IMG/VR virus record: IMGVR_UViG_3300032315_001715
Coordinates: 62,001 to 126,000 of that record
Direction: 5' to 3' (one strand)
Length of the DNA: 64,000 nt
Shown here: one piece after another, positions 7,883 through 50,036 of the stretch
How the letters are laid out: the number at the start of each line of letters is the position of its first letter
How positions within the stretch are numbered: position 1 is the stretch's first letter
The notes under the pieces: generated by a model
What the model saw: the letters and a program-made list of their open reading frames with translations, nothing else
Database searches by the model: none
Told to the model about the DNA's origin: nothing
Position numbers and translations under genes: made by a program

Positions 7883-7976
7883 GGTTGTATCTCCAGTAAT
7901 GTATGGAGATATTTATTTTACGGCATTTGGATCATAAACCTGAGGTTAATGGCACGACTGGTTCGGTACCGCTTGA

Positions 7977-8602: not shown

Positions 8603-8803
8603 TCATTTTCCTGCGCGCTTGCGGCCACGTCGCATGTTGGCCTGCCAGCGTGCTAGCTGGGCCTTGCGCCCAGATCCGCGGCCGATCTTATCCAACTGCC
8701 CTAGGCTGGCGTGTTTTGGTATGCCGTGCCGGCGGCTGTCACCCGGACGACCAGGCCCCTTGCCGTCCGCGAAGTTTTCCTTGATGAATTCCCAGGCCCG
8801 CAT
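8603..8803 (-). CDS. small basic late protein
   Basis: MRAWEFIKE N-terminus; TAAATA at 8809-8814; very Arg/Lys-rich. Confidence 0.65.
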   Translation of the reverse strand: MRAWEFIKENFADGKGPGRPGDSRRHGIPKHASLGQLDKIGRGSGRKAQLARWQANMRRGRKRAGK

Positions 8804-8818
8804 GGGATTATTTATCGA

Positions 8819-9076
8819 TCATGTCCACGTCATCTGGAACAAGATCGCATCCTCGTGGTTTTTAAAGGTAAACATTGCCCGTCCGGACTCGGTTACCATG
8901 GATTCATGCCCCCAGGTCCATGAATCCATGGTTAGATTATTGACGCACCAATCCACGTGATCATGTATGGCATCGGTGGTGATGTTCAGCTTAACAACAC
9001 TGGGATGGTGCTGCGGATTTTCGACCAGGATCTCAGCATCAGCATGGTGTCGCCTTATCAACTCAACCTTCATCAT
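8819..9076 (-). CDS. small protein of the F..EDA..F..TW paralog family
   Basis: C-terminus FTFKNHEDAILFQMTWT. Confidence 0.7.
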   Translation of the reverse strand: MMKVELIRRHHADAEILVENPQHHPSVVKLNITTDAIHDHVDWCVNNLTMDSWTWGHESMVTESGRAMFTFKNHEDAILFQMTWT

Positions 9077-9077
9077 G

Positions 9078-9284
9078 CTAACACCATGTCAGCTGGAACA
9101 GCATGGCGTCCTCGAGCCGACGGAATCTCACGTCGGCATGTCCGAATATTTCGGCGAAATCCCAGAACCAGTCATCGGGCATGGTGGGCTTCCAACTCCC
9201 ACCGAGTCCAATGTTGTCCAGCAGCCAATGGCAGATCTCTGAATGTTGGGGATAATAATCTCGATCCAATCTGATGATCTTCAT
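9078..9284 (-). CDS. small protein of the F..EDA..F..TW paralog family
   Basis: C-terminus RFRRLEDAMLFQLTWC. Confidence 0.7.
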   Translation of the reverse strand: MKIIRLDRDYYPQHSEICHWLLDNIGLGGSWKPTMPDDWFWDFAEIFGHADVRFRRLEDAMLFQLTWC

Positions 9285-9287
9285 TGG

Positions 9288-9728
9288 CTACACCAGGGTT
9301 TCCTGCGTTTCGGTGCGGATCTCGATCATCACGATGTCGATTGGATGGGTCAGGAGAGCCATCAGCTCGTCCCTGATCTCAATGCAACGATCCAATGCAT
9401 CATGATATGGCTGCACACGGTAACCACCATTGGGCGGCACCCGACGATTAAGGTCCAAGATGCTGTCCAACGATCTCCGTGCTTGATCAATGTTCTGCTC
9501 GGCCTCGACGATTTCTTCTTGCAGCCGTGCAGGAATCAGGCTTGCGATCTTTCGCATGGCCTTTTCGGACCTGGCAACGGAAACCGGATGGTCAATTACT
9601 TCGAGATATCTGATCTTATAGTCCGTGTTGCCATCGTAACCCCAGGCCCGTACACTGATGTATTTTCCCAGCACCTGGCTCTTGAATGCGTAGATCTTGG
9701 AGGTGTGTACTCCGGGTTTGCGTGCCAT
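9288..9728 (-). CDS. hypothetical protein
   Basis: 146-aa ORF in a co-oriented gene run. Confidence 0.55.
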   Translation of the reverse strand: MARKPGVHTSKIYAFKSQVLGKYISVRAWGYDGNTDYKIRYLEVIDHPVSVARSEKAMRKIASLIPARLQEEIVEAEQNIDQARRSLDSILDLNRRVPPNGGYRVQPYHDALDRCIEIRDELMALLTHPIDIVMIEIRTETQETLV

Positions 9729-9772
9729 GATTCAACGTTCCTAGATTGGTTAACAATGGTGGCATTTGATCA

Positions 9773-9810
9773 GCCGGGGCAGGAACATGCTCAGCGGTTC
9801 CTGCCCCGGT
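9773..9810. terminator. GC-rich hairpin (terminator-like)
   Basis: CCGGGGCAGGAAC...GTTCCTGCCCCGG inverted repeat. Confidence 0.5.
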
Positions 9811-9958
9811 CGTCGTTTTAGCCTTCCGGCTCAGCCAGCTGTCCTTGCAGGTGCCGGATTTTCATTCGGTAATCCCCCTGGGAGCGTTGACCTCGTATCC
9901 GTGTGACCTCAGTAGCTTGATCGCCGCATTGATTGTGTCGGACGGAATGCTATCTTCG

Positions 9959-10258
9959 TCAGTCATCATTGTTTCTCCTGAGTTCGCGCAACATCTTGGC
10001 AGATCTGCTGCCTCGGATCAACACTATGGTATCAAATGGCTTGCACTGGTCCAGCAGATTGGTGATCAGCACAAACACCCCAAGGGGCCATGTGACGGCC
10101 CGCACCAACACCATCCACAGATCAGCCAGGGTGATGTCGTCGCCCCTGGCCCATTCCATGTATGACATGATGCCACTGGTGATCACCCCGGCGGTGAGAT
10201 ACGCTACGAACCAAATCAAGAGATCCTCCATTGAGAGGGTTAAAGTGACCATCGTCAC
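9959..10258 (-). CDS. small membrane protein
   Basis: Two hydrophobic segments, W-P motif. Confidence 0.5.
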   Translation of the reverse strand: MTMVTLTLSMEDLLIWFVAYLTAGVITSGIMSYMEWARGDDITLADLWMVLVRAVTWPLGVFVLITNLLDQCKPFDTIVLIRGSRSAKMLRELRRNNDD

Positions 10259-29661: not shown

Positions 29662-30492
29662 TCATACCTCTAGGACTATTGGTGTCCAGTTGTCGTTTTC
29701 TCCACGATATCCCTTGGCGTTGCAAACATAAGTTGTCGGTCCAATGCTCGCCATATCGCGTTGGTGAGTGTGTCCATAGATCCAGTATCGGATCTTTGGA
29801 TCCACGATGCTTTCCATGCGAGTGTTGGCAAAGCTACCATGCAGCAGGGTCCAAACTCGATCATGCGGGCGTTGCCATAGGAAACGTCGATTTGGGATGT
29901 GGTGGGTGACCGCCACCACCGGACCTTCTATCATTGGTATTTGATCACGGATATATTCCCAATCACGCACCCCAGCATCAAATGGTTTGAGATGGTCAGG
30001 TTGTATCAGTCCACGCTGCCATGGGATCGTGCGATCATTTAATACTTCGTACCAAACTTTAATCTGATCCTCGGTGCTATAGGGATCACCCGCACGGTAG
30101 TCGTGCCATCCGGTAGCACCGACAAAGGTCACTCCGTCGATCACCACCTTGTTGCGATGGAGGAAGGTGATACCATTGGTATCACTCCACCTCTGGTAGT
30201 GGTCAAGCATCTCGGGCATGTCGTGTGGATACGGCCATTTCTCCTCAAACTCTCGATCATAAACGCGGGTTTGGTGGAAACCAAGATTGTAAAAATCATG
30301 GTTTCCTGCCACCCAAACGACGTTAGTGAATCGTTGCTTGGCTAGAATCAGCCATCGGCTGGCTTCTCTAACATCGTTGCTGATGTCTCCGGCTACTACC
30401 AATGTGTTTACATCAGGGTCCATGTTTTCCAGGCACTCCCAGTCCCAGCGATTCAAATCGACGTGAATGTCTGATACCAGTGCGAATTTCAT
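29662..30492 (-). CDS. calcineurin-like metallophosphoesterase
   Basis: SDIH, AGDI, AGNHD, THH, GHTH motifs. Confidence 0.92.
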   Translation of the reverse strand: MKFALVSDIHVDLNRWDWECLENMDPDVNTLVVAGDISNDVREASRWLILAKQRFTNVVWVAGNHDFYNLGFHQTRVYDREFEEKWPYPHDMPEMLDHYQRWSDTNGITFLHRNKVVIDGVTFVGATGWHDYRAGDPYSTEDQIKVWYEVLNDRTIPWQRGLIQPDHLKPFDAGVRDWEYIRDQIPMIEGPVVAVTHHIPNRRFLWQRPHDRVWTLLHGSFANTRMESIVDPKIRYWIYGHTHQRDMASIGPTTYVCNAKGYRGENDNWTPIVLEV

Positions 30493-30551
30493 TCTACATG
30501 CTCCCTATGCAGCTATAGAATAGCACACCGCCAACATCGGGTCAACTTGAT

Positions 30552-31103
30552 TTACATTCTCCAAAAAACATGGGAACCCAAACGAATCTTCCGGGCCCTT
30601 GGTGCCCATCCCGGAACCAATCCGTGATGATGGAAATATGTTGATCCATTTGCGGTATCTGGTAATCGTCCGAGATACACATCTAGTGCTATTTCCTGCA
30701 TCTTGATCCAAGCATCATCCTCTCGGCGCCAACGCGGGCCTCGAACTATGCCTGCCCAACTAAACTGATACTGGCGGCGACCACCTGCCCATCCGTATTG
30801 GAACACGTTGGTGCAGATGTTTGATGAAAAGGCTGGATTGCCCATTCGATTAATTGGTACCCAAGCCACAGCGATCTGCTCGGCTCGGACGCCCCCTCGG
30901 GCTTCAAAATATAGATTCCATGCCAAGCACTCGAGATCGCGCTGCGCAGGTTCCTCTAACACAAGTGCCTCTGGGATGGTCAGTGGCAGGTGGTGCCGCA
31001 GGCTTGGGACCGCTCGATAATCAGCTCGAACATCCACTGGTTGTGCCTGAGCGACTCCTGTCATTAATACCCATAACACCGTGACAAGATATCTGACTCG
31101 CAT
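30552..31103 (-). CDS. SleB-like cell wall hydrolase (Hydrolase_2)
   Basis: CLAWNLYFEARG, INR, QFSW, GSTYFH, LGSHVF. Confidence 0.9.
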   Translation of the reverse strand: MRVRYLVTVLWVLMTGVAQAQPVDVRADYRAVPSLRHHLPLTIPEALVLEEPAQRDLECLAWNLYFEARGGVRAEQIAVAWVPINRMGNPAFSSNICTNVFQYGWAGGRRQYQFSWAGIVRGPRWRREDDAWIKMQEIALDVYLGRLPDTANGSTYFHHHGLVPGWAPRARKIRLGSHVFWRM

Positions 31104-31352
31104 TATCCTATGCTCTCCTTTTCTTAGTTTTATAGGCTCAGGAACGTTTATGTCAACGTATATGATCTAAGCCATTGATCGATAAGAATCTTATCCATCA
31201 AGAACGCCGGTTTTCACCACGAATTGGCGCGATATGATATTTAGAACTGACTGCGGTTATATAACACACAACAGAACTTAGGGCAGGCGAATGTGTCACC
31301 TACCCTGATAGTAGACATAACTATATATACGCAAAAAGATCGAACAGCAACC

Positions 31353-31802
31353 TTAATCCAAATATAGGCCACTATTAGCTGGATGTTTCATGACCTCGAC
31401 GGTTCGCACGGATACCCGAGATTCTAGATCTCTCTCGCACAACCAGCCCCGCACGCGGTGCCATATCGTCTCGGCAAATCGCTCCATCCCGACACCTGAC
31501 ATGATTCTTAGGTCAATTACTCCGTAGGAGTGAAGGCGCTGAAAATCAGTTAATCTAGGGTCGTCCTCAGCAATACATGTCGTATGGCTAAATGTTTCCT
31601 TGAGCCACGAATCGATTTCTTCCATATCATCCAGATCCAATGCTCGACCCGTTTCATCGAGCATGGTCACCGCAAGCACTATCTTAACATGCAAAGAATA
31701 ACCGTGCAGAAATCTAGCCTTGGATTTTGCTTTCCAATTGCGCCAAGCACACGTAAGTCCTGCGTTATGATCGTAGGTTTTGGTGGTAATATATTTTCCC
31801 AT
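31353..31802 (-). CDS. 6-pyruvoyl-tetrahydropterin synthase / QueD-like protein
   Basis: CAWRNW..LHGYS, LDETGRALD, FSHT, GMERFAE. Confidence 0.75.
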   Translation of the reverse strand: MGKYITTKTYDHNAGLTCAWRNWKAKSKARFLHGYSLHVKIVLAVTMLDETGRALDLDDMEEIDSWLKETFSHTTCIAEDDPRLTDFQRLHSYGVIDLRIMSGVGMERFAETIWHRVRGWLCERDLESRVSVRTVEVMKHPANSGLYLD

Positions 31803-31874
31803 GTTGATCTCCCTTTGCGTTATTAAACCGATGTCTTGACCTATAATCAATATAGCAAGCATACTCGTCATACC

Positions 31875-32101
31875 ATGGATAAAAATTGAAAGATACGATT
31901 GAGCTCGGAGAAAAGCTCAGCAACAAGCTGATAGCCTGCGTCACTGAGCTAAATTTACTGTTGCAGGAGGCAAACAACATCGGTCTCCATGTGATTCTTC
32001 AGAAAGACGAAATTTATGTCAAAGACGTACCGCTGCCAAAGATTTCGATCAAGAAATCGACATATCGAATCGAATACATCGACGCTGTTAAACCCGATTG
32101 A
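31875..32101 (+). CDS. hypothetical protein
   Basis: Short ORF divergent from the queD-like gene; start uncertain. Confidence 0.4.
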
Positions 32102-32456
32102 TCAACAACTATGGAATGATTATGTGTCTGGGCAACTGCGATTACCGGATAACAGTCGGTCTTCGCCTCCGGTACAAAAGCCGATATACCTGAAAAAGAG
32201 CCTAGATCTGCATGGAATGACCGTACAGCAAGCCTACCATCGTACCGAGGAATTCATTGGATCGCATCATCGGCTTGGGACCAAACAGGTTGTTATAATC
32301 TGCGGCAAGGGTGGTAGGATAGCATACGAGCTACCGCTATGGTGCAACCGATTTGGACAGATATCCAAGATCATACCAATCGTCGACAGCCGAGGTGAAC
32401 ACGGGTCGTATCGAATCGTGTTGAAAGTTAAAAATATCCGAGATTTTCCTGCATAA
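32016..32456 (+). CDS. stand-alone Smr-domain protein
   Basis: DQQLW, SLDLHGMTVQQAY, VIICGKG, GEHGSY.IVLK; true start probably downstream of 32016. Confidence 0.8.
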   Translation: MSKTYRCQRFRSRNRHIESNTSTLLNPIDQQLWNDYVSGQLRLPDNSRSSPPVQKPIYLKKSLDLHGMTVQQAYHRTEEFIGSHHRLGTKQVVIICGKGGRIAYELPLWCNRFGQISKIIPIVDSRGEHGSYRIVLKVKNIRDFPA

Positions 32457-33884: not shown

Positions 33885-35300
33885 TCAGGCCGTGACGGCC
33901 TGATAGCGCTCACCCATGATGGTCTCAAGCATGATGTCTCGCGGCGTGAAGTTCTCTGCCGCCAGGATGCTCTTCATGATGCTCGGGCTGAACCCGCTCA
34001 CCATTGCCGTGCCGCGCTGATCGAAGCGCACTGGGCTGTTGCCGGTGGCATCCGGGCGGGCATTGAGATTCCACCACACCAGCTTGGGCAGCTCGTATCC
34101 AGCCGCCTCGAACATGCGCTGGGCAAGATCAAACGCACCCAGGCTTGCACCGCCGGCCCAGGCCGCGTTGAACTCCATGTCGCTCAACACCAGGAGGTAC
34201 CGAGGCATCTGATCAGCCGGCACGCGATTCTGCACCGCCACCTGCAGGATGCTGCGGAACGCGCTCTCCAGGTTGGTGTCGTAACCAACGTTGCGACGCA
34301 CCTGGTTGATCTTGGCTAGCAGGTCTCCCTTGAGCACGTCAATGTGGCTGTCACGGGTGAACGTCAGCCACATGTCCTTGAACGCACCCTGCTGCTTGTC
34401 GGCAACATACAGACCGAGGCTGATTGCCACGTCCATGCAGGTAAGACCTGCACCCGCCTGTCCGCCAACCGGGCAGCTCATGCTACCGCTGACATCCACC
34501 ATCGGAAGGATGGCATCATCACCGAGATAGTTCGGCAGTGCCTCCCACTGCGCCAGTGCCACAGCACGGTCACCATGTGCAACTGCCTTGATGACGTCGT
34601 ACGGATAAAGCACACCGGCGTTGACCTTGCTTGTGCCGTCCTTGAGACCCTCCTTCCAAGCCGCGTAGCGGGTGGCATCGCGCTTGTTGAAGGCCTTCTG
34701 ATAGCGGTTGGCAGCCACGCTAGGAACGTGATCGTAGTTGATCTGATCCCAGGTCTTGGCGCACATCTGCGTCTCAACAACCTTGGTGAGGTCAACGACG
34801 AGTCGGCGGTACTGCTTGGGAGTGAAGTTCAGGTACTTGCGCAGCTCGTTGGCTACCTCGCCCTTGCGGGGCATCCACTTGGCAGCAAGACCGTTACCGC
34901 CACGCAGGGCGCGTGCGATCAGGTCATATGCCGCCATCTTGACCTGCGGCGTCTTGAACTCGAGGAGGTCGTCCCAGCGACCGTACTCGGGTACCAGCGC
35001 AAGATTGCGCATGAGGCTCTCCGGATGGCTGACCTCCAGGTTACGAACGATCTTGCGGAAGGTCTCACGCTCGCCAGCACCGCCGCGAACGTCGCGCGCC
35101 CAGAATAGGATCTTCATGGCCACAGCCGGCTCGGCCGCATATGCACGGGCAAATGCGCCGGTGAGATCCTTGCCGCGGCTGGAACCGATGGCGAAGAACA
35201 GATCCACGTTAGGGTCAAGGCTGCTTTGATTGGTTGCCATGCCGTTGGCAGTAAGGCTCGGCTGCATGGTATTCTGTAGTGCCTGTGCGAAAGTGACCAT
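33885..35300 (-). CDS. DUF2828-family Ro60/TROVE-like protein with a C-terminal vWA domain
   Basis: Start MVTFAQ after a GAGGAG RBS; TANG, DLFF, RDVRGGAGER, YGRWDDL, AAKWMPR, VPSVA, MIDAS DVSGSM, SDMEF, WNL, VSGFS. Confidence 0.85.
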   Translation of the reverse strand: MVTFAQALQNTMQPSLTANGMATNQSSLDPNVDLFFAIGSSRGKDLTGAFARAYAAEPAVAMKILFWARDVRGGAGERETFRKIVRNLEVSHPESLMRNLALVPEYGRWDDLLEFKTPQVKMAAYDLIARALRGGNGLAAKWMPRKGEVANELRKYLNFTPKQYRRLVVDLTKVVETQMCAKTWDQINYDHVPSVAANRYQKAFNKRDATRYAAWKEGLKDGTSKVNAGVLYPYDVIKAVAHGDRAVALAQWEALPNYLGDDAILPMVDVSGSMSCPVGGQAGAGLTCMDVAISLGLYVADKQQGAFKDMWLTFTRDSHIDVLKGDLLAKINQVRRNVGYDTNLESAFRSILQVAVQNRVPADQMPRYLLVLSDMEFNAAWAGGASLGAFDLAQRMFEAAGYELPKLVWWNLNARPDATGNSPVRFDQRGTAMVSGFSPSIMKSILAAENFTPRDIMLETIMGERYQAVTA

Positions 35301-35322
35301 TTCTATTCTCCTCATCTGTGTC

Positions 35323-35375
35323 AGGTTGAACTTGGTTTGTTTGATAAAAACAATTGGTGTTGCGGAACTCAACCT
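35323..35375 (-). ncRNA. Y-RNA-like element A (5' leader hairpin of the TROVE-like gene)
   Basis: AGGTTGAGTTCCGCAAC...AAGTTCAACCT closing stem with a variant CCGCAA motif. Confidence 0.6.
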
Positions 35376-35386
35376 ATAAAGTGTAC

Positions 35387-35470
35387 GGAATCGAATGGTG
35401 GGTTTGAACCATCCTCACAATGCCCCGCGAAGGGCGTCGCTTCAACCGAAGTAGTTGCTGAACCGATTCC
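35387..35470 (-). ncRNA. Y-RNA-like element B
   Basis: GGAATCGGTTCAGCAAC...TCGATTCC closing stem; internal T-loop-like TGGTTCAAACCCA. Confidence 0.65.
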
Positions 35471-35490
35471 TTGAACTCTTGATCTAATGC

Positions 35491-35622
35491 TGGATCAACT
35501 TTTGTGGATCGCTGCCTTTACCATTTGGCTATCCCCCTTCGGTTGGTAGGGGGAGTTGGACTTGAACCAACAGTGGCTTTCGCCGGCGATTTTACCTTCC
35601 AGTTTGTTGCTGAACTGATCCA
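35491..35622 (-). ncRNA. Y-RNA-like element C: circularly permuted tRNA (Tyr/Leu-like, long variable arm)
   Basis: TGGATCAGTTCAGCAA..GTAAA ATCGC, variable arm, GTTGG TTCAAGT CCAAC, TCCCCCT A CCA, linker ACCGA, AGGGGGA TA GCC AAATGGTAAA GGC A GCGAT..AGTTGATCCA; own promoter TTGACA-17-TAACAT at 35631-35659. Confidence 0.85.
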
Positions 35623-35725
35623 TTAAATCTATGTTATGCTAGTTTTTAGCTCTTGTCAACGACTAATTTGCGCTGTAATCAACTTTCTTATTTCTAATAA
35701 CTTGCATTTACATTATAATTCGACA

Positions 35726-35845
35726 GGATCACCTTTACGTTGCTCTACCTCTGAGCTACACCCCCATAGTAAATTGTGGCGGGGATGGCAAGGAATTGAA
35801 CCTGCGACCTACGGCTTGACATGCGTTTAATTGCTGAACTGATCC
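35726..35845 (-). ncRNA. Y-RNA-like element D: circularly permuted tRNA-Asp(GTC)-like
   Basis: GGATCAGTTCAGCAA..T GTC AA GCCGT AGGTC GCAGG TTCAATT CCTTGC CATCCCC G CCA, 11-nt linker, GGGGGTG TA GCTC AGAGGTA GAGC A ACG..TGATCC; promoter TTGACT-17-TAATAT at 35855-35883. Confidence 0.85.
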
Positions 35846-35961
35846 ATTAACGTAATATTAGTGCAAATATCTCATCTAGTCAATGCGTATTTTGGCTAAA
35901 TATTGTGTGCAGTTCGCGGGCCGGAATCCCCAACTGCTCTATAACCGATAGGAGTCACAGC

Positions 35962-36621
35962 ATGACTATGTACCATAGAATACCATCAGGTTTCTACATT
36001 TATGCGTATATTCGAAATCAAACATCTACACAAGGACAGAAAGGAACTCCCTATTATATCGGAAAGGGAAAAGGATATAGAGCATACGTGGATCATAAGA
36101 ATATTCCTGTTCCAAAAGACTTTGATTACATAGTCATTATGGAAGAGAACTTAACTGAATTAGGGGCACTTGCGTTAGAGCGTCGATACATACGGTGGTA
36201 CGGAAAAATAAGTGATGGCTCTGGCATACTTCGAAACATGAATGACGGAGGAACAGGAGGATCCCATAGCTTACAATCTCGCCAAAAGATTTCAGAGTCG
36301 GCCAAAAGTCGACCTACCATGCCACAACATGTTCGAGAAAAACTGAGCAAATCGTTAATAGGTCGTAAATTATCCGATGAACACCGGAGAAAGATAAAAG
36401 AAAGCGCCAGCCGCAAGCTTACGGGCCCCAGATCTTTAGAAATCCGTAAAAAAATACAAGATGCTGCGCTTCGCAGAGGTCCAGTGTCAGAAGACACAAA
36501 AAAGAAACAAAGCGATGCAAATAAGGGCCAATATTGGTGGACAAATGGGGTAAAAGATATACGGTCTCATATAAATCCGGGAAAGTGTTGGCGACGGGGG
36601 AGAACATTCTCTACCAACTGA
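35962..36621 (+). mobile_element. free-standing GIY-YIG-like homing endonuclease with NUMOD3 repeats
   Basis: [34 protein letters not shown]...R.KIS repeats; TAAATA at 35897-35902 and a leader hairpin. Confidence 0.85.
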
Positions 36622-36701
36622 GCTACCGTCCCATATCAGAGGAACGGATCGGATTCGAACCGATGACCTGTAGGTTGAATGTTAGTTGCTGAACTAATCC
36701 C
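36596..36701 (-). ncRNA. Y-RNA-like element E: circularly permuted tRNA, 3' end overlapped by the endonuclease gene
   Basis: GGGATTAGTTCAGCAAC..TTC AA CCTAC AGGTC ATCGG TTCGAAT CCGAT CCGTTCC T, short linker, GGGACGG TA GCTC AGTTGGTA GAG; promoter TTGACA-17-TATTAT at 36710-36738. Confidence 0.8.
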
Positions 36702-36766
36702 TTGCCTTGATAATACGATCGATCAGTGATCGTGTCAACGGAAAAGATCAAATGTCCTGCATAAAT

Positions 36767-37480
36767 ATGCGCATGTTCGATTTCATAAGATTGCTGGAGT
36801 TATCCGGAATAAAATTCCTCCTCGAGGATCTAACGCCTGGGCAGGCCCGTGGCATTTTCAAGCAATATGGTGCTAATGACGCTGATCTCTCGCCCGATAA
36901 AATCCGAGCAACCTGGATAAAATTGGTCAGACAGATGCATCCTGACAAGACCGGCGGTGATCACCAACCACTTGCCATGATAAATGCGGCGTATGATGTG
37001 CTCAAAGCTCCGGCATCTGCTACGGTGGCCAAGGATGATCGAGGATTTCCGGCCTGGCAAACGGATCAGCGATCAACAAGAAATGACATTGCAACTAATG
37101 ACTACACCGACGTGAATTTCTTCAAGAAGCGCATGTGGGAGCTCAGTGGTAAGAGCCAGGAGAAATGGACCATCTATGCGTTTGATGGCACGTTCTTCCG
37201 CGGCATGGTAACCGTGTTCGGCAGCTCGCGAATTTTCAGAGACATGGCAAAGGCCATGGTAATACATAATAGCCGCGGTGGTAATCCACATCAAACCAGA
37301 GCAGTGTTTGTGCAAGATGATACCGATCCGGATATAATACTGATATGGCTAGACGGCAATGAAATCAGCCCGCCGATACCTATGGAACATGAAAGTCGCA
37401 ATAGGAACCCAGCAAATGATCTCGGATTCACAAGTCGGTTGTCCAAAGTATTGAATCAGATATCGTCAGGTCGAGATTAA
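36767..37480 (+). CDS. J-domain (DnaJ-like) protein, late-expressed
   Basis: IRATWIKLVRQMHPDKTGG..MINAAYDVLK; TAAATA at 36762-36767. Confidence 0.8.
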   Translation: MRMFDFIRLLELSGIKFLLEDLTPGQARGIFKQYGANDADLSPDKIRATWIKLVRQMHPDKTGGDHQPLAMINAAYDVLKAPASATVAKDDRGFPAWQTDQRSTRNDIATNDYTDVNFFKKRMWELSGKSQEKWTIYAFDGTFFRGMVTVFGSSRIFRDMAKAMVIHNSRGGNPHQTRAVFVQDDTDPDIILIWLDGNEISPPIPMEHESRNRNPANDLGFTSRLSKVLNQISSGRD

Positions 37481-37930: not shown

Positions 37931-37968
37931 GCAAAAGGGCATGCACCCATCGATGCATGCCCTTTTGC
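37931..37968 (-). terminator. intrinsic terminator ending the H-G-F RNA cluster
   Basis: GCAAAAGGGCATGCA...TGCATGCCCTTTTGC inverted repeat. Confidence 0.75.
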
Positions 37969-37977: not shown

Positions 37978-38217
37978 GGATGGTTTGTGGTTCGCTTTTT
38001 ATTTCTTTCTGGCAGATTATCTTATCCATATCGCCCAGAGCTGGATTCAAAGTCCAGTTACCGATATGGTCCCACCTTCTGCCCTAGCTTGATTTCTTCC
38101 AAGCAATATCTTGCCTCGTGCAAGACCGATCCTGGCTAAGCCCAGGCAGCCTCGATGACTAATGGACCTAGGATCCAGTCGTCGCCGTTGGGTCGAAGTA
38201 TGCTGCTGTACCCATCC
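37978..38217 (-). ncRNA. Y-RNA-like element F (240 nt, multi-hairpin)
   Basis: GGATGGGTACAGCAGC...AAACCATCC closing stem; several internal hairpins including CTGGA-CTTTGAA-TCCAG. Confidence 0.7.
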
Positions 38218-38233
38218 ATTGATAAATGCCCTC

Positions 38234-38324
38234 AGGAACGTTTTGCCCTTGTTTAGCCAGGCTGGGCTCCTGGTTTTGCTACAAACGTAGCTTCCTGATT
38301 TTAAGGTGTTGCTGCACCGTTCCT
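38234..38324 (-). ncRNA. Y-RNA-like element G
   Basis: AGGAACGGTGCAGCAAC...AAAACGTTCCT closing stem; internal hairpins GCTAC/GTAGC and CCAGG/CCTGG. Confidence 0.7.
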
Positions 38325-38356
38325 TATGGTATTCTCAAATTTCTAAACAACAAAGC

Positions 38357-38409
38357 GGGAAAGCTTTTGGTTTGCGTACAAAGCAATTTTTGTTTGCTGC
38401 ATGTTTCCC
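38357..38409 (-). ncRNA. Y-RNA-like element H
   Basis: GGGAAACATGCAGCAA...TTTCCC; promoter TTGACA-17-TACATT at 38418-38446. Confidence 0.65.
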
Positions 38410-38429
38410 TTGCACGTAATGTATGTGAT

Positions 38430-39275
38430 CTAGGTCACAGTGTCAATCGCTAATCCATGGGATTTTTGAACAAATCCAACTAGCTGATCAGCAAAGATGT
38501 CCACTGCCTCCTTGGTCGGATGGTTGGTCCTAGTCATCATGGACTTTTTGATCGTCGGTAACCAACCTGTAAATATTGGATGATCAGTTGTGCTCCATAC
38601 CGGTAACCAATGAGATTGGTCAATGGTTGAATAAATCATCCTTGGTAGATATGCACCATTTGGTCTTGGCATGGGATGCAAGCTATTCCAAAACACATAT
38701 TTCACACCGATTGAATCTAGAAAAAACTGCAAGGTCAGCACTGACCTCAGCAGTTGATTGGCCAACCATGTCGGAGTTGCACAGGTGACAAATGCCTTGC
38801 TAAACTCTCGGTGACGTTCATAAAATTCATGTAGATATTGCATGCGATCATTATCATACATCGAAGTTTGTTTGATAAGGTCGTTGATATTAAACGGATT
38901 GAAGGTCATCGCTGCGTGCGAATTCACTTCATCAAATATCATTATACGTGCTGGCTCGGTCCAGCCAATAAATGCCATCCATTCGGTTGGATCGCCACCC
39001 GAATCCATCATCGCCTTGAAAAATGCAATGGTATCATATGCTATTACGTCGTTGTTGTTGCCATTTCGGGCCTTGTTAACCACTTCCGTAGAACCCATTA
39101 ACGCATGTACGCGCCCTGATAGATTAACTTTCTGCAGATCGTGCCAGTAGTTGCTGCCCAGGATTCGACTTTCCTCGGTGAGCCTGGGATTCTTGTTGTA
39201 ATCCCAGGCTACATCAAGACCATGAACAAACGAACATCCGTTGAAAAATAATCGAGATGGCATTTGGTCGATCAT
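38430..39275 (-). CDS. SGNH-hydrolase-like protein
   Basis: FFNGCSFVHG, N.A..G, GWT...R, HPT motifs. Confidence 0.7.
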   Translation of the reverse strand: MIDQMPSRLFFNGCSFVHGLDVAWDYNKNPRLTEESRILGSNYWHDLQKVNLSGRVHALMGSTEVVNKARNGNNNDVIAYDTIAFFKAMMDSGGDPTEWMAFIGWTEPARIMIFDEVNSHAAMTFNPFNINDLIKQTSMYDNDRMQYLHEFYERHREFSKAFVTCATPTWLANQLLRSVLTLQFFLDSIGVKYVFWNSLHPMPRPNGAYLPRMIYSTIDQSHWLPVWSTTDHPIFTGWLPTIKKSMMTRTNHPTKEAVDIFADQLVGFVQKSHGLAIDTVT

Positions 39276-39919
39276 AGCACCGTTGACTTTTCATGTCCAA
39301 CACGTATTGTTGGATCTATCCAAATTTCGTGTCCATTCTCCTGGGCAGTCCAACAGAATCCAACGTCCTCGGCGCAAAAATCATGGAATCTTTCATTGCT
39401 GACCCATCTCGGCCGGAACCAAGGGTATTCCATTTGTTCGATGACACCGGCCTTGATGGCAACAAATCCAAATCCAGTATAACTAACTCTGAATGGCTGC
39501 GATCTAAATGCCATTTCGTTGCGATCCATGAACTTAAATACCCCGTGATCAGCAAGATGAGAGAAATCTAGATTTTCCACCACCGGATAATGTTGATTGT
39601 CGGACATGATATATGTGCCACCGGTGATGGGCTTGTCGCTGGAGATCAGCTTGAGAACATCATCTGGTGACCATACCATATCCGAATCGATCCATATCAT
39701 CTGATCGTAGGGTAGTTTCCCTTGCCACGGCAGTTGGGAACGTCCGGCGGTATTCTGGCCGCCTAATATTCGATTTCTAGCATAATACACCACCGGATCA
39801 TATCCCATGCTGTATGCGTAACTGATACCTCGAGCGCTCAATTCGGCAATGGTTGAATTCCACGAGTTGAAATAGTTGGAGCTAAATGTGCGCCCAGGAA
39901 GGCAGAATATTAATTTCAT
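39272..39919 (-). CDS. GT-A fold glycosyltransferase
   Basis: ARNRI, WIDSD, GFGFVAIK, EDVGFC, VGHEK. Confidence 0.85.
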   Translation of the reverse strand: MKLIFCLPGRTFSSNYFNSWNSTIAELSARGISYAYSMGYDPVVYYARNRILGGQNTAGRSQLPWQGKLPYDQMIWIDSDMVWSPDDVLKLISSDKPITGGTYIMSDNQHYPVVENLDFSHLADHGVFKFMDRNEMAFRSQPFRVSYTGFGFVAIKAGVIEQMEYPWFRPRWVSNERFHDFCAEDVGFCWTAQENGHEIWIDPTIRVGHEKSTVL

Positions 39920-40641
39920 ACCATTTTGCTCCTAACCAGATCATCCAATGCAGGTGCGGCCGTTTCGATTGAATCGTAAAAGACCTCATGAAACAAATCG
40001 CCGTCAATGCTGTTACACGGTTCAAGATTGTTGAGTATCTTGAAAGCAGGGCAGTTTGTCATCAATGCATTGATGTTGATCACCTGTCCGCTGGTACCGA
40101 TCATCACCACCACATCTCGGCTAGATAGCCGCTTGAACGCTCGATAGAGATCAGCATACCTCGGGGCAGAATCGTTGAAAAATACCACGCCGGGCTTTAC
40201 ACCCTTGGAACTATTGCACTTCGGGCATCTATCGTTGTCAACCGACCAAGGTTCATATCCAACATCCCAAACATGCCCGCATGCGATGCACTTCATGTCC
40301 TGTAGATATCCGTGTAAATGGATGATATCATCGCACCCGGCACGTTCAAGTAGATCATCGACGTTTTGTGTCAACATGATGGATCTATCGGTGAAATCCT
40401 TCTTCCAATTTGAAAGGAGCCTGTGCCCGATCGTGGGTACAACCGAAGCTAGACTGGACCGCAGGGTGTTGTAAAATCCATGCACAACCTCCCGATAATC
40501 TCGCCATGTTAATGCGTTGCAAACCACGTCGACGTCGTAGCCGTTCCAGAGACCGTTTTGATCTCGAAAAGTTGCTACGCCGCTCGGGGCGCTGAGACCT
40601 GCCCCTGATATCACCACCAATGTCGGTAATCTATCGTCCAT
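39916..40641 (-). CDS. cobB: Sir2/CobB-family NAD-dependent deacylase
   Basis: SGAGLSAPSGVATFRD, TQNVDDL, HLHG, CxxC..CxxC, IGTSG. Confidence 0.9.
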   Translation of the reverse strand: MDDRLPTLVVISGAGLSAPSGVATFRDQNGLWNGYDVDVVCNALTWRDYREVVHGFYNTLRSSLASVVPTIGHRLLSNWKKDFTDRSIMLTQNVDDLLERAGCDDIIHLHGYLQDMKCIACGHVWDVGYEPWSVDNDRCPKCNSSKGVKPGVVFFNDSAPRYADLYRAFKRLSSRDVVVMIGTSGQVININALMTNCPAFKILNNLEPCNSIDGDLFHEVFYDSIETAAPALDDLVRSKMV

Positions 40642-40642
40642 C

Positions 40643-41413
40643 TCATGTTTTCCTTCTATACTCTGCCGAGTGATACCATTCTTTAACTTCGTCTAGATTC
40701 TCTATCAATAGCGACGGATCAGCATGCTGGTCAACCGTTTCCACGCGATATGGTTTAGAAAATCCGGGATAGATCCCGGATACCAATTCGTCAAATTGAA
40801 TTCGGATACCAATACCTCGTGAAATCAAATCTTCTTGTATCAGAATGGTCGACTGCATGCGCCAATACACCTTATGCATGGTATTGTAGTCAACCACAAC
40901 GGGCTCACTATCGTGTTGACCATCCGGGTTAGCATTGCTTCTAACCACCAGATAGCTGACCAACTGATCCCATGGGTTGCGTTGTACACACAGCCATTTG
41001 CATCCTTGCAGATCAAGCATGATGGACGGAATCTGAAAGATGTTGTCTGGCCACACCGTAACTGCCCATCTGGTTTGTATGTTCGATAGCTGTCTCCAGC
41101 GACGCAGGCGATCTAGAATCTTAACAGTGTGCTTGTAATCCTCAAGCAACGGGCGTTCCCTTGTCTGATTGCGATAATAGATTATGTCAGCAGGCGTCAT
41201 CCTTGATATCTTGCCATTCTCAAGACTGCTGGTCCTCGTATCAAAAAATTCACCAAATGCGTGATACCCAAACGATGCTAATATTGATGCTAGAAGCTTG
41301 GTACCAGATCTAGGAGATCCAAATATCACCAGTTTCTTGTGATCAAGTATCGAGGATTGTGTAACAGCGGTTCCTGCTTTGTCGTGGGAATTTATGTTGG
41401 ATAATTTTACCAT
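40643..41413 (-). CDS. sulfotransferase-like P-loop protein
   Basis: GSPRSGTKLL PAPS loop, GEFF, RNPWDQLVSY. Confidence 0.7.
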   Translation of the reverse strand: MVKLSNINSHDKAGTAVTQSSILDHKKLVIFGSPRSGTKLLASILASFGYHAFGEFFDTRTSSLENGKISRMTPADIIYYRNQTRERPLLEDYKHTVKILDRLRRWRQLSNIQTRWAVTVWPDNIFQIPSIMLDLQGCKWLCVQRNPWDQLVSYLVVRSNANPDGQHDSEPVVVDYNTMHKVYWRMQSTILIQEDLISRGIGIRIQFDELVSGIYPGFSKPYRVETVDQHADPSLLIENLDEVKEWYHSAEYRRKT

Positions 41414-42639: not shown

Positions 42640-43605
42640 CTATGCGGCCTTGCGCTGATTATTCCCAACATGGATGCGCTTGCCAATCTTGTTCATCGTG
42701 AATCCACGTAGACTAAGCTCATTGCGGCTGTCAAAGTCGGCATCGAGCAATCCGCGTGCAAACTGCTCAACATGGTTAACGCTGAATCCATACACCCCTT
42801 GCAGATCAAGAACACGCAGGATCATGTTCTTGATGCGCAGATATCCTAAATCGCGCACCTTGGTCCATTCTAAACAGCCATCTGTCATGGTTACTGATGA
42901 GATGTCCTGATCCGCTAGCATTGTTGTTAGCTCCCAAGCTTCGCTAAGATGCTGGATGCTGCGAATGGTGTTGATGTCGGCGATATCAAATCTTTCCTGG
43001 ATCACCGGCCAAATACGATTGCGGATGTAGTTACGGTCATATTTGTTATCAGAATTGGAAGGATCTTCAATCGCAACCACGCCATGTTCACCGGCCCACG
43101 CTTCAATTTGATCCCGTGTGACATTTAACATCGGGCGGAGAATCATCATTTTAGCATCGTACCAGCAAGGTGCGCTGGTATCCATGGCCTTGAGACCCTT
43201 AACGCCGCTGCCCCTGAACAGCTTGAGCAGGAAGCTTTCACACTGGTCGTTGGCGTGGTGTGCTAAAATCAGTGCATCGGCGCCACTTTCGCAAAACGCC
43301 CGATAACGGGCTTGCCGTGCAGCATATTCTAGATTGTTGCCGAGACCATCGAGGTTAACCTTCTTAACTTCACATGAGATCCGAAGGATCGTGCAGGTTG
43401 CCATGACATGATACGACCAATCCACACTATGTGGATGGATGCCATGATCAACATGCATCACGCGGATAGGTACCGGAAGAAGATCTCGATGTCGTGCCAG
43501 CCAGTGCAGGAGGACCATGCTGTCCATCCCACCGCTAACACCAACGAGGCAGTCTTTCTTACCGTCCAATAGCCGTGCGACGTCATCAACATTAATGATG
43601 TCCAT
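42640..43605 (-). CDS. tilS: tRNA(Ile)-lysidine synthase
   Basis: GVSGGMDS, HVDHG, AARQARY, AHHANDQCE, RPML, EDPSN..RNYIR. Confidence 0.92.
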   Translation of the reverse strand: MDIINVDDVARLLDGKKDCLVGVSGGMDSMVLLHWLARHRDLLPVPIRVMHVDHGIHPHSVDWSYHVMATCTILRISCEVKKVNLDGLGNNLEYAARQARYRAFCESGADALILAHHANDQCESFLLKLFRGSGVKGLKAMDTSAPCWYDAKMMILRPMLNVTRDQIEAWAGEHGVVAIEDPSNSDNKYDRNYIRNRIWPVIQERFDIADINTIRSIQHLSEAWELTTMLADQDISSVTMTDGCLEWTKVRDLGYLRIKNMILRVLDLQGVYGFSVNHVEQFARGLLDADFDSRNELSLRGFTMNKIGKRIHVGNNQRKAA

Positions 43606-48896: not shown

Positions 48897-49730
48897 TTGA
48901 GAATCATTGAATTGGCTAGAAACATCATCAAGGAATCATTTACCGACATCAGCGTTGTTAAACTTGGCATCGGTGCATTGGTAAATCAGGCAGATGCCGA
49001 TCTAGGTGATGAAGCCGCGGCCGCCATAGACGCATTTGTTGGGGTTCCCCACGATGCGATAAAAAAAGGATATACATTTGGAATCATGCATTCCAGACCG
49101 CTTGAAGACGCATATTCTTCCAATCCAAGTCCCCGAGGAATCAAAATGCGTCAGCAGTTGGATTCGGCATTTGCTCCTATAAAGTCGGCATTGAAGTCTA
49201 AGTTTGGCAATGTTATGACGTTGTATCGAGGCCAAGAGAGCATTGATAATGAGAAAACGGAAAGAACCACACTTAGCTGGACATCCGATCCCCGAATTGC
49301 TGCCACGTTCGCCGGTATCGAACCGTGGGAAATGAAGCTGAAGCCCATTACCGATGAACAAATACAATCCGCATTGGACACATATGCCAAAACAGGAGAG
49401 GTTAAATTCCTCAGGAACCGATACGTTCGCACGGACACTCCGACTGATGAGGAAGGAAAGGACGAATTCTATTACGACATATATGACAATCACGACGATC
49501 TACTAACCGACGGCGACGATCTTGAGAATGAATTCAAGGATCATCAGAGATACCATCAGGAATTGATAGATAAACGGGCTCGAAAACTTACAAAGGTGGT
49601 CAGGGCTGAAATACCAGTTGATGACATCATCTGGATAACCGATCGCGCGGGACAAAGCGAATTCATCCTGCACAATCGGCCTGGTGCTCGAGGTTACATT
49701 GATGCTAAAGGAAAGCTGATAAAAGGATAG
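48897..49730 (+). CDS. putative ADP-ribosyltransferase-fold protein, late-expressed
   Basis: TLYRG, LSWTSD..A..FA, QSEFI (R-S-E pattern); N-terminus MRIIELARNIIKES; TAAATA at 48850-48855. Confidence 0.55.
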   Translation: MRIIELARNIIKESFTDISVVKLGIGALVNQADADLGDEAAAAIDAFVGVPHDAIKKGYTFGIMHSRPLEDAYSSNPSPRGIKMRQQLDSAFAPIKSALKSKFGNVMTLYRGQESIDNEKTERTTLSWTSDPRIAATFAGIEPWEMKLKPITDEQIQSALDTYAKTGEVKFLRNRYVRTDTPTDEEGKDEFYYDIYDNHDDLLTDGDDLENEFKDHQRYHQELIDKRARKLTKVVRAEIPVDDIIWITDRAGQSEFILHNRPGARGYIDAKGKLIKG

Positions 49731-49739
49731 GGCGGGATT

Positions 49740-50005
49740 TCTCCCGCCCCTTCTGTTTCTAGGCCTTCCTTGTGGCCCAATGGAATTACGCTGCTAGCAG
49801 CTCATTCTCAAATGCTGCGTTATCATTTGCTGCATTTACAATTTTCTTGCGTTAAGGTAGCTTGCGCACCGCAACCGCACTATTGCTAGATTCCTTTTGC
49901 CCTTAATGCTGCCAATCGATCCCAAATCCGGCCCATAAATGGTGGACCGGAGGAGAATTGAACTCCTGTCTTGTTCAGCTTATTTGGCTACAGTCAAACA
50001 GTTAC
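49740..50005 (-). ncRNA. ssrA: two-piece (circularly permuted) tmRNA
   Basis: GAC AGGAG TTCAATT CTCCT CCGGTCC A CCA, TTTAT linker, GGGCCGG (G3-U70); tag ORF 49786-49833 AANDNAAFENELLAA*; terminator hairpin ~49729-49750; ends approximate. Confidence 0.93.
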
Positions 50006-50036
50006 ATCTTTATTTATGCGAAATTCTCCTCAGTTG

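What the first reader, a model, noticed from the sequence alone, without database searches (positions are those of the whole stretch)
37978..38409. Second Y-like RNA cluster (H-G-F) carries isolated anticodon-arm mimics
Seen: one promoter (38418-38446), three CAGCA-stem RNAs, then a strong terminator (37931-37968). F contains CTGGA-CTTTGAA-TCCAG (38041-38057), a 5-bp stem with a 7-nt loop having U33, TTG and A37, matching a tRNA-Gln(UUG) anticodon arm. H contains TTGC-TTTGTAC-GCAA (Thr UGU-like loop). G has CT-TAA-AA-TCAGG (Leu-like 3' anticodon strand) right after the motif. Inference: these RNAs present anticodon loops without tRNA bodies, complementing C/D/E, which are bodies with broken loops. 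They may bait anticodon nucleases or modification enzymes.
Basis: inference. Interest (0 to 1): 0.72.

Follow-up and report, generated by a model that had tools for sequence, protein, structure and literature searches.

The report
Phage Y-like RNAs displaying anticodon arms
Three small RNAs made from one promoter in a giant lake phage belong to a large, apparently undescribed family of phage RNAs that sit next to a Ro60-like protein gene and carry pieces of tRNA, often a bare anticodon hairpin, which suggests a new way for phages to interfere with proteins that recognise tRNA.

Summary
On the minus strand, one promoter (38446-38418) precedes three RNA units: H (38410-38357), G (38324-38234) and F (38217-37978). 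A strong terminator follows (37968-37931).

Each unit has a 6-7 bp closing stem and a conserved 5'-side loop, GUNCAGCAA. A variable module, an A-rich 3' side and CCUGU complete it. CAGCA lies in that loop, not in a stem.

Five more units lie 0.6-3 kb downstream, and the last ends 18 nt before a 471-aa gene (Pfam DUF2828 + DUF7788). Its predicted fold matches Ro60/TROVE (Foldseek E 1.8e-9).

A covariance model built only from other phages finds H and G. In 76 related loci, all 203 hits lie on the strand of that gene. The family also occurs in Listeria phage A511, Mycobacterium phage Bromden and a Felix O1-like coliphage.

About half of the small units carry only a hairpin with a 7-nt loop close to CU-NNN-AA. 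U33 plus R37 occur in 39 of 46 such loops against about 1 expected.

- **H:** an atypical member of this class (4-bp stem, U32, C38).
- **F:** embeds a 5-bp/7-nt UUG arm, and its one relative keeps U33, UUG and R37.

Binding to the protein and any decoy function remain inferred.

The parts
38418..38446 (-). Sigma-70-type promoter of the H-G-F transcript (TTGACA, 17 nt, TACATT). The predicted start falls at the first base of H's closing stem.
   Evidence: 10 of 12 consensus positions. The position is conserved in L004.
38357..38410 (-). Unit H. Closing stem 38409-38403 with 38364-38357 (one bulged C). Motif AUGCAGCAAAC at 38402-38392. The module is a single hairpin, UUGC-UUUGUAC-GCAA, at 38386-38372. 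The 3' side is A-rich.
   Evidence: Model R2, built without this phage, scores it 27.7 bits, E 1.4e-4. The R1 alignment places the hairpin on the family's anticodon-like hairpin. In L004 the closing stem changes compensatorily (A-U to G-C) and the loop becomes UUUUGAU.
38234..38324 (-). Unit G. Closing stem AGGAACG / CGUUCCU and motif GUGCAGCAAC. The module has two hairpins, GCUAC-GUUU-GUAGC and CCAGG-AGCCCAG-CCUGG. It has no anticodon-like loop.
   Evidence: R2 E 4e-3; own-genome search E 5e-3. The first hairpin covaries with L004 (GCUGACC..GGUCAGC). Folds.
37978..38217 (-). Unit F (240 nt). Closing stem GGAUGG (38217-38212) with CCAUCC (37983-37978). The motif is a variant, GUACAGCAGC (38211-38202). 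The module of about 220 nt holds at least five hairpins. The 3' end, CACAAA-CCAUCC-UGU, fits the family consensus.
   Evidence: Whole-cluster fold. Consensus fold with L004 gives 54 pairs, 5 of them compensatory. The models do not find F. Membership rests on architecture and position.
38026..38069 (-). F's anticodon-arm-like element. A 5-bp stem with the 7-nt loop CUUUGAA (38057-38041) sits inside the 8-bp helix CCAUAUCG / CGAUAUGG.
   Evidence: L004 has CUGGA-UUUUGGA-UCUAG inside CCACGUCG / CGAUGUGG, so U33, UUG and R37 are kept and the outer helix covaries.
37931..37968 (-). Intrinsic terminator closing the H-G-F transcript. The hairpin could work in both directions.
   Evidence: A terminator hairpin is present at the same place in L004.
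35319..36703 (-). Cluster 1: five further units of the same family. They lie at 36703-36575, 35848-35721, 35624-35487, 35472-35383 and 35377-35319. Three carry circularly permuted tRNA-like bodies. Two plus-strand ORFs interrupt the cluster.
   Evidence: R2 hits E 7e-8 to 0.5. Weak Rfam YrlA hit of 24.9 bits at 36608-36668. Three units have their own promoters.
33885..35300 (-). Gene for a 471-aa Ro60-like protein (Pfam DUF2828 + DUF7788, MIDAS motif DVSGSMS). It is the presumed protein partner of the units.
   Evidence: Pfam E 3e-39 and 1.5e-34. AlphaFold model pLDDT 82. The top 13 Foldseek PDB hits are all Ro60/TROVE, E 1.8e-9 to 3.7e-6, TM 0.39-0.59. PHROG 850 'RNA-binding protein'.

Best explanation
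H, G and F are three members of a phage family of Y-RNA-like small RNAs. They are transcribed as one precursor from the promoter at 38446-38418 and end at the terminator at 37968-37931.

Each unit pairs its two ends in a short stem. Next to the stem it exposes a conserved stretch, GUNCAGCAA, facing an A-rich 3' strand. I infer that this stem-plus-loop is the binding site for the Ro60-like protein encoded 2.7 kb downstream, as the terminal stem of Y RNAs binds Ro60.

The rest of each unit is an exchangeable module built from tRNA parts. In H it is a bare hairpin aligned to the family's anticodon-like hairpin. In F an anticodon arm is held on a long helix within a larger fold. In cluster 1 the modules are permuted tRNA bodies. 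G's module is of unknown kind.

The most likely function is that the ribonucleoprotein presents these tRNA parts to proteins that recognise anticodon arms. The leading candidates are host tRNA-cleaving defence nucleases, which the particle would occupy or sequester.

Shown: the architecture, the family, its linkage to the gene, and the anticodon-like loops. Inferred: protein binding, processing into separate RNAs, and the decoy role.
For: Architecture and family.
- Eight units in the window share stem, motif and A-rich 3' side.
- The motif occurs 172 times on the gene strand and 33 times on the other strand in 80 related loci.
- Model R1 gives 203 hits at E <= 1e-3 in 76 loci, all on the gene strand.
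- The independent model R2 finds H, G and four cluster-1 units at E <= 0.01 (a fifth only at E 0.5), and only on the minus strand.
- Nothing else in the 453-kb genome matches.

Deep linkage to the gene. Units flank it in Listeria phage A511, Mycobacterium phage Bromden, coliphage REP11 and Cronobacter phage S13.

Protein. The predicted fold is Ro60-like over its whole length.

Anticodon likeness.
- 46 of 97 loops have 7 nt, and 39 of these have U33 and R37, against 0.95 expected from shuffles.
- The hairpin pairs are 81-89% formed with many double changes. The full structure, closing stem included, is 94% paired against 67% in shuffles, 0 of 500 reaching it.
- CUUUUAA stays invariant on three covarying stems.
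- F keeps U33-UUG-R37 in L004.

Context.
- The gene sits in or beside tRNA arrays: 984 tRNA genes in the loci, all on its strand.
- Frequent neighbours are kinase and phosphoesterase genes of the kinds used in RNA end healing.
- The genome has Rnl1- and Rnl2-like RNA ligases.
- UUU, UGU and GUU are the anticodons of the tRNAs cleaved by AriB (PMC12409363).
Against: - No expression or binding data exist. No RNA run holds the locus and the complex predictor does not handle RNA.
- The motif differs from the known Ro60-binding motifs GNCGAAN0-1G and GGUCCGA (PMC4201824), so binding is an analogy.
- H is atypical: a 4-bp stem, U32 and C38, no thermodynamic signal, and a loop that changes between two close relatives.
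- F has only one independent homologue and the models do not detect it.
- Hairpin stems are no closer to cognate phage tRNA stems than to non-cognate ones (5.76 versus 5.59 of 10, p = 0.28). Any mimicry is therefore generic at the loop.
- The A+U-rich composition favours U- and A-rich triplets.
- In the distant phages whose units I read by eye (A511, Bromden), the modules are hairpins whose loops are not clearly anticodon-like.
Confidence: 0.55

Rival explanations
1. The same ribonucleoprotein is an adaptor for repair or quality control rather than a decoy. The tRNA-like modules would tether tRNA-handling enzymes (ligase, kinase/phosphatase, modification enzymes or an exonuclease) to the Ro60-like ring. 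The ring would hold damaged tRNA ends, as Y RNA tethers PNPase to Ro60 in Deinococcus.
For: - Ro60-like fold.
- Precedents in the literature: Ro60-Y RNA-PNPase complexes, including one from a Thermus phage (PMC12135203), and YrlA tRNA mimicry (PMC4201824).
- Neighbours include an AAA_33 kinase, metallophosphoesterases and a DSP phosphatase.
- The genome has Rnl1- and Rnl2-like ligases.
- A TilS-like gene lies 4 kb away.
Against: - The ligase genes are 165 and 270 kb from the locus.
- The neighbourhood may reflect shared ancestry of related phages rather than function.
- A bare anticodon hairpin is a poor handle for enzymes that need the tRNA elbow or acceptor end.
Confidence: 0.25
2. The units are cis-acting elements rather than trans-acting RNAs. 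They would be leader or operator sites for autoregulation of the Ro60-like gene, or processing punctuation within tRNA precursors.
For: - One unit ends 18 nt before the start codon here (35377-35319) and in most related loci.
- In other phages the units are interleaved with tRNA genes.
Against: - H-G-F has its own promoter and terminator and no coding sequence.
- Three cluster-1 units have their own promoters.
- Loop conservation of the CU-NNN-AA kind is not needed for punctuation.
- Autoregulation by the last unit is compatible with the main explanation.
Confidence: 0.12
3. The anticodon likeness of H and F is incidental. They would be A+U-rich hairpins, or decayed remnants of tRNA genes, with no mimicry function.
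For: - H is not more stable than shuffled sequence.
- H's loop differs at 4 of 7 positions from its closest relative.
- The stems do not copy cognate tRNAs.
Against: - The excess of 7-nt loops with U33 and R37 is about 40-fold over shuffles.
- The hairpin stem covaries.
- UUU and UGU loops are invariant while their stems change.
- F keeps U33-UUG-R37 together with compensatory changes around it.
Confidence: 0.08

Closest known systems
Bacterial and phage Y RNAs of the YrlA type with Ro60/Rsr (Rfam RF02553; Chen et al. 2014, PMC4201824)
   Same: - Small RNAs are encoded beside, and on the strand of, a Ro60-fold protein gene.
- The ends pair in a stem with a conserved purine-rich stretch on the 5' strand.
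- The remainder mimics tRNA. Cluster-1 units have T arm, closed acceptor stem and D arm in the same permuted order.
   Different: - The protein is Pfam DUF2828/DUF7788. Neither Pfam TROVE nor a sequence search of the PDB recognises it.
- The motif is GUNCAGCAA, not GNCGAAN0-1G.
- The best Rfam YrlA score is 24.9 bits against a threshold of 69, and H, G and F get none.
- Many units carry only an anticodon-type hairpin, a part that YrlA lacks.
- There are up to eight units per phage.
Thermus phage phiLo Ro60 with Yrl1/Yrl2 (PMC12135203; PDB 9KOP, 9L5Y)
   Same: - A phage-encoded Ro60-fold protein with Y-like RNAs encoded upstream of its gene.
- It is among the best structural matches to the model here.
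   Different: - The phiLo RNAs have the CGAA motif and a stem-bulge-stem shape, with no tRNA parts reported.
- Sequence identity to the protein here is about 17%.
Deinococcus radiodurans Yrn1
   Same: According to PMC4201824 it can be drawn with a possible 'anticodon arm' of 5 bp, so a Y RNA carrying an anticodon-like hairpin has a precedent.
   Different: - Its loop has 6 nt, it is a single case, and it has the canonical Ro60-binding helix.
- The family here shows a 7-nt CU-NNN-AA loop across many phages.
Phage tRNA genes that escape anticodon nucleases (T5 tRNA-Lys, -Thr and -Asn against PARIS AriB; PMC12409363, PMC11464382)
   Same: - They involve the same tRNA identities: UUU, UGU and GUU.
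- They share the genomic setting of phage tRNA arrays.
- The supposed aim is the same, to blunt tRNA-targeting immunity.
   Different: - Those are complete, functional tRNAs that replace cleaved host tRNAs.
- H and F cannot be aminoacylated or decode. They could act only by binding.
Two-piece (circularly permuted) tmRNA
   Same: It is a permuted tRNA-like gene order, and one such tmRNA lies in the same window at 49695-50033.
   Different: It has no Ro-type stem or motif, and its function in trans-translation is known. This bears on cluster 1, not on H, G or F.

Membership tests
Y RNA / YrlA (RF02553) | Encoded within a few kb of a Ro60 orthologue, on the same strand | tested here: met
   H-G-F lies 2.7-3.1 kb upstream of a gene whose model matches Ro60 structures. 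The linkage and strand hold in 76 loci, 203 hits to 0.
Y RNA / YrlA (RF02553) | Ro60-binding motif GNCGAAN0-1G (bacteria) or GGUCCGA bulged helix (animals) near the 5' end | tested here: not met
   The units carry GUNCAGCAA at the equivalent place. The known motifs are taken from PMC4201824.
Y RNA / YrlA (RF02553) | Score at or above Rfam's gathering threshold (69 bits) | tested here: not met
   There is no hit for H, G or F. The best hit in the window is 24.9 bits, on a cluster-1 unit. Ten related loci gave only tRNA among the 150 matches listed; 23 lower-scoring ones were not shown.
Y RNA / YrlA (RF02553) | tRNA-like domain with T arm, D arm and closed acceptor stem | tested here: not met
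   H, G and F lack these parts. Cluster-1 units at 36703-36575, 35848-35721 and 35624-35487 have them.
Y RNA / YrlA (RF02553) | Physical association with the Ro60 protein | not testable with these tools
   The complex predictor gives no verdict for RNA, and no RNA data exist for this phage.
tRNA anticodon arm | 5-bp stem closing a 7-nt loop with U33 and a purine at 37 | tested here: met
   F has CUGGA-CUUUGAA-UCCAG, and L004 keeps it as UUUUGGA. H has a 7-nt loop with U33 and A37 but only a 4-bp stem. G has no such loop.
tRNA anticodon arm | Stem sequence resembling that of the cognate tRNA (specific mimicry) | tested here: not met
   Stem identity of the units to cognate phage tRNAs is 5.76 of 10, against 5.59 for non-cognate ones, p = 0.28. 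Host tRNAs are unknown.
tRNA anticodon arm | U-turn fold and anticodon-loop modifications in vivo | not testable with these tools
   This needs chemical probing and modification mapping.
Ro60 / TROVE protein | HEAT-repeat ring followed by a vWA domain with a MIDAS motif | tested here: met
   The model has pLDDT 82. The top 13 PDB matches are all Ro60/TROVE over the whole length, with TM 0.39-0.59. DVSGSMS is present, and D269, S271 and S273 are invariant in 29 homologues.
Ro60 / TROVE protein | Recognised by sequence (Pfam TROVE, or a PDB sequence search) | tested here: not met
   Pfam gives DUF2828 + DUF7788 only. phmmer finds nothing in the PDB. The profile reaches TROVE chains only at E 1.2.

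The most novel reading that the evidence does not exclude
Many tailed phages may carry a modular 'tRNA-part display' particle: a divergent Ro60-like protein loaded with a set of small RNAs. The shared stem and GUNCAGCAA loop would dock on the protein. The exchangeable modules (bare anticodon arms of defined identity such as UUU and UGU, T arms, whole permuted tRNAs) would each capture or neutralise a different tRNA-recognising host protein, in particular anticodon nucleases of the PARIS or PrrC kind. That would make it an RNA-based, multi-target counter-defence that works by mimicry rather than by replacing tRNAs.
Probability: 0.3. Interest if true: 0.9.

Novelty: new variant of a known kind. 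Interest (0 to 1): 0.8.

Why it matters
- The DUF2828 protein is found in 704 cultured phage records, among them Felix O1-like coliphages, Listeria phage A511, staphylococcal, campylobacter and mycobacterial phages. It is annotated only as 'RNA-binding protein'.
- The papers I could search name no RNA partner for it.
- Giving it a defined and easily recognised RNA family makes its function testable in model phages.
- If the anticodon hairpins act on tRNA-targeting immunity, this adds a new class of RNA-based phage counter-defence. It would also help explain what bacterial Y RNAs do with their tRNA mimicry, which is still unresolved.
- These units explain part of the unannotated spacers in phage tRNA arrays.

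Tried and rejected
- **Rfam.** At gathering and at permissive thresholds it gave no family for H, G or F. The window gave only a permuted tmRNA, and related loci gave tRNAs in the listed matches.
- **blastn against cultured phages.** The locus found nothing.
- **PDB by sequence.** Neither the single protein nor the profile recognised the protein. Only the fold comparison did.
- **F's conserved core.** An exact-pattern scan of viral contigs found only this phage lineage and L004. F's module therefore cannot be tested further by comparison.
- **Models on F.** R1 and R2 do not detect F.
- **Protein-RNA complex.** It counts neither for nor against binding.
- **Sequencing runs.** Only DNA metagenomes from lakes hold the locus, so there is no expression evidence.
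- **Specific tRNA copying.** The idea that the hairpins copy particular tRNAs, stems included, was rejected against the phages' own tRNAs.
- **Hypervariable triplets.** The result was mixed. Loop changes are only mildly enriched (9 of 38 differences, p = 0.03). They come from the units next to the gene, whereas UUU and UGU loops are invariant.
- **G's 'Leu-like strand'.** Rejected.
- **F's other hairpins.** I considered that they mimic rRNA targets of ribotoxins. I found no support beyond short chance-level resemblances and dropped the idea.
- **My first stem finder.** It picks up 6-7 bp stems by chance at long range, 122 unique control-strand units against 342. Only the short class (112 against 7) and the model results are used as evidence.

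Full report
**Setting.** The window is bases 62001-126000 of a 452,799-bp virus record from lake or freshwater metagenomes, judged complete by CheckV. Everything discussed here lies on the minus strand.

**What is at the coordinates.**
- A sigma-70-type promoter, TTGACA-17-TACATT, lies at 38446-38418. The predicted start falls on the first base of unit H.
- About 430 nt without a credible ORF follow.
- A 16-pair G+C-rich hairpin with a U run lies at 37969-37930.
- The next gene starts at 37917.

**Anatomy of the three units.** Folding of the whole transcript and of its pieces, together with the family consensus, shows one plan for each unit:
- a closing stem that joins the 5' and 3' ends;
- directly 3' of its 5' strand, a conserved unpaired stretch GUNCAGCAA(C);
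- a variable module;
- an A-rich 3' strand;
- the 3' strand of the stem, followed by (C)CUGU.

The units are as follows.
- **H (38410-38357).** The stem is GGGAAAC / G(C)UUUCCC, and the module is the single hairpin UUGC-UUUGUAC-GCAA.
- **G (38324-38234).** The stem is AGGAACG / CGUUCCU, and the module has two hairpins.
- **F (38217-37978, 240 nt).** The stem is GGAUGG / CCAUCC. The module of about 220 nt has at least five hairpins.

It is the core of a conserved loop.

**The locus.** Five more units with the same plan lie at 36703-35319.
- Three carry tRNA-like bodies in permuted order: T arm, acceptor 3' strand, short loop, acceptor 5' strand, D arm.
- This is the arrangement described for bacterial YrlA RNAs (PMC4201824). 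One of them gives a weak Rfam YrlA hit of 24.9 bits against a threshold of 69.
- The last unit (35377-35319) ends 18 nt before the start codon of a gene at 35300-33885.

The product of that gene has 471 residues. Pfam assigns DUF2828 + DUF7788, and it carries a MIDAS motif. An AlphaFold model built on 29 homologues has pLDDT 82. Its 13 best Foldseek matches in the PDB are all Ro60/TROVE proteins, with E from 1.8e-9 to 3.7e-6 and TM 0.39-0.59 over the whole length. They include Ro60 of Thermus phage phiLo, Deinococcus Rsr and frog Ro60. Sequence methods do not see this relationship. The label 'Y-like' is therefore justified by fold and by gene linkage.

**A large family.** I fetched 80 viral contigs encoding relatives of the protein, at 47-100% identity.
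- The motif GTNCAGCA[AG] occurs 172 times on the gene's strand and 33 times on the other. Most copies lie in the few hundred bases before the gene.
- Units of 50-70 nt with a 7-bp closing stem number 112 on the gene strand and 7 on the control strand.
- Covariance model R1, built from 90 small units, finds 203 matches at E <= 1e-3 in 76 loci searched on both strands. All 203 lie on the gene's strand.
- A second model, R2, was built only from those other phages. It excludes this phage and its closest relative. In the window it finds the unit before the gene (E 7e-8), H (27.7 bits, E 1.4e-4), 35624-35487 (E 1e-3), G (E 4e-3) and 35848-35721 (E 0.01). All are on the minus strand.
- In the whole genome the matches are confined to this locus.

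The protein occurs in 704 cultured phage records. R2 finds units on the gene's strand in several of them:
- directly upstream of gp57 of Listeria phage A511;
- directly downstream of gp54 of Mycobacterium phage Bromden;
- between tRNA genes of the Felix O1-like coliphage REP11;
- in Cronobacter phage S13.

None was found within 4 kb of the gene in Vibrio phage nt-1 or Sinorhizobium phage phiN3. Rfam has no family for these RNAs among the listed matches. The papers I could search name no RNA partner for DUF2828 proteins.

**Are the modules anticodon-like?** I folded the interiors of 95 distinct small units.
- 46 of 97 hairpin loops have exactly 7 nt, against about 6 per set of shuffled interiors.
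- 39 of the 46 have U at the second and a purine at the sixth position, against 0.95 expected.
- The composition is C32 36/46, U33 40/46, A37 41/46 and A38 42/46. This is also the consensus of the 508 distinct anticodon arms of real tRNAs in the same loci.
- The 5-bp stem of this hairpin played no part in selecting the units. It is 81-89% paired with frequent double changes; one pair reads AU 27, UA 21, CG 16, GC 7. With the closing stem, which was used in selection, the full structure is 94% paired against 67% in shuffles, and 0 of 500 shuffles reach it. Slid controls give 32-48% (the same picture on A4).
- The commonest loops are CUUGUAA (11) and CUUUUAA (7), followed by CUUGAAA, CUCAUAA, CUGUAAA and CUGUUAA.
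- CUUUUAA remains invariant on three different covarying stems, and CUUGUAA is invariant among relatives that differ elsewhere.
- In 99 larger units, 7-nt loops are again in excess, 84 against 22. Of these, 36 are T-loop-like, about 10 D-loop-like and 11 anticodon-like.

The modules are thus assembled from tRNA parts, and a bare anticodon-type hairpin is the commonest small module.

**How H, G and F fare.**
- **H.** It aligns to the hairpin class but is atypical. Its stem has 4 bp and it has U32 and C38. It is no more stable than shuffled sequence (z = +0.40).
- **H in the relative.** In L004 (84% protein identity) the stem is unchanged and the loop reads UUUUGAU. U33 and A37 are kept, but the triplet is not.
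- **F.** The arm is canonical, with 5 bp and loop CUUUGAA. In L004 it is CUGGA-UUUUGGA-UCUAG, which keeps U33, UUG and R37. The enclosing 8-bp helix changes compensatorily (CCAUAUCG/CGAUAUGG to CCACGUCG/CGAUGUGG).
- **F as a whole.** The consensus fold has 54 pairs with 5 compensatory changes. The rest of F has no T or D loop and no relatives outside these two lineages. The models miss F, so its membership rests on closing stem, motif variant, 3' consensus and position.
- **G.** It is a family member, but its module has no anticodon-like loop.

**Mechanism.**
- *Shown:* a conserved stem-plus-loop shared by all units; strict linkage and co-orientation with a Ro60-fold gene across phages of Proteobacteria, Firmicutes and Actinobacteria; modules made of tRNA parts.
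- *Inferred by analogy with Ro60 and Y RNAs (PMC4201824, PMC12135203):* the stem-plus-loop docks on the protein and the module is presented to other factors.

Several observations point to a role in the conflict over tRNAs.
- The gene sits in or at the edge of tRNA arrays. The loci hold 984 tRNA genes, all on its strand.
- Frequent neighbours are a P-loop kinase, metallophosphoesterases and a DSP phosphatase.
- This genome has Rnl1- and Rnl2-like RNA ligases and no RtcB.
- The best-conserved triplets, UUU and UGU, with GUU also present, are those of the tRNAs cleaved by the PARIS nuclease AriB (PMC12409363).

I therefore favour a decoy or sequestering role against anticodon-arm-binding proteins. 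A repair or quality-control adaptor is the main rival.

Against a close, tRNA-specific mimicry: the hairpin stems are no more similar to cognate than to non-cognate phage tRNA stems. A+U-rich composition also favours such triplets. No expression or binding evidence could be obtained.

**Verdict.** Its structural half holds for H and F and gains strong support from the family. Its functional half remains a hypothesis.

The wider result is a widespread RNA family, undescribed in the sources I could search, partnered with a divergent Ro60-like protein. It is a new variant of the Ro60-Y RNA kind.

Noticed in passing
window 49695-50033 (-): Circularly permuted (two-piece) tmRNA gene with tag peptide AANDNAAFENELLAA. 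Rfam tmRNA_permuted scores it 67.7 bits.
   Followed up: no
window 35905-36621 (+): ORF with a NUMOD3 motif and, by eye, a GIY-YIG-like N-terminus, so probably a homing endonuclease. It is inserted within RNA cluster 1. Its 3' end overlaps the D-arm side of the unit at 36703-36575.
   Followed up: partly
window 36770-37480 (+): J-domain (DnaJ-like, HPD motif) ORF on the opposite strand, lying between the two RNA clusters.
   Followed up: no
window 35848-35721 and 35624-35487 (-): Two permuted tRNA-like units encode GCCA and ACCA directly after the acceptor 3' strand, before the loop that leads into the acceptor 5' strand. Cleavage there would leave a two-piece tRNA-like RNA with a CCA end.
   Followed up: no
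window 35319-35377 (-): One unit of the family ends 18 nt before the start codon of the Ro60-like gene, with the ribosome-binding site in between. The same arrangement occurs in most related loci and suggests feedback control of the gene by its own product.
   Followed up: partly
window 42640-43605 (-): A 321-aa PP-loop ATPase (PF01171, E 2.6e-53). This family includes the tRNA anticodon-modifying enzyme TilS.
   Followed up: no
window 29662-32456: Metallophosphoesterase (29662-30492, -), cell-wall hydrolase (30552-31103, -), QueD-like PTPS (31353-31871, -) and an Smr-domain ORF (32016-32456, +), all downstream of the Ro60-like gene.
   Followed up: no
window 39916-41413 (-): SIR2-family ORF (39916-40641) and sulfotransferase-like ORF (40643-41413), upstream of the H-G-F promoter.
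   Followed up: no
genome G000:C1 321051-321206 and 378822-414497 (outside the window): 43 tRNA genes, mostly in one region far from this locus. Two tRNAs have anticodon CUA, which hints at reassignment or suppression of TAG. ARAGORN called no tRNA-Thr.
   Followed up: no
window 1-10000: G+C content is 0.55-0.61 in the first 10 kb, against about 0.47 in the rest of the window.
   Followed up: no
L005:5784 versus L007:5783; L033:5970 versus L048:1135: In near-identical units that lie directly before the gene, all differences fall in the 7-nt loop (for example CGUCCAA versus CUGCUAA). UUU and UGU loops elsewhere are invariant while their stems change.
   Followed up: partly
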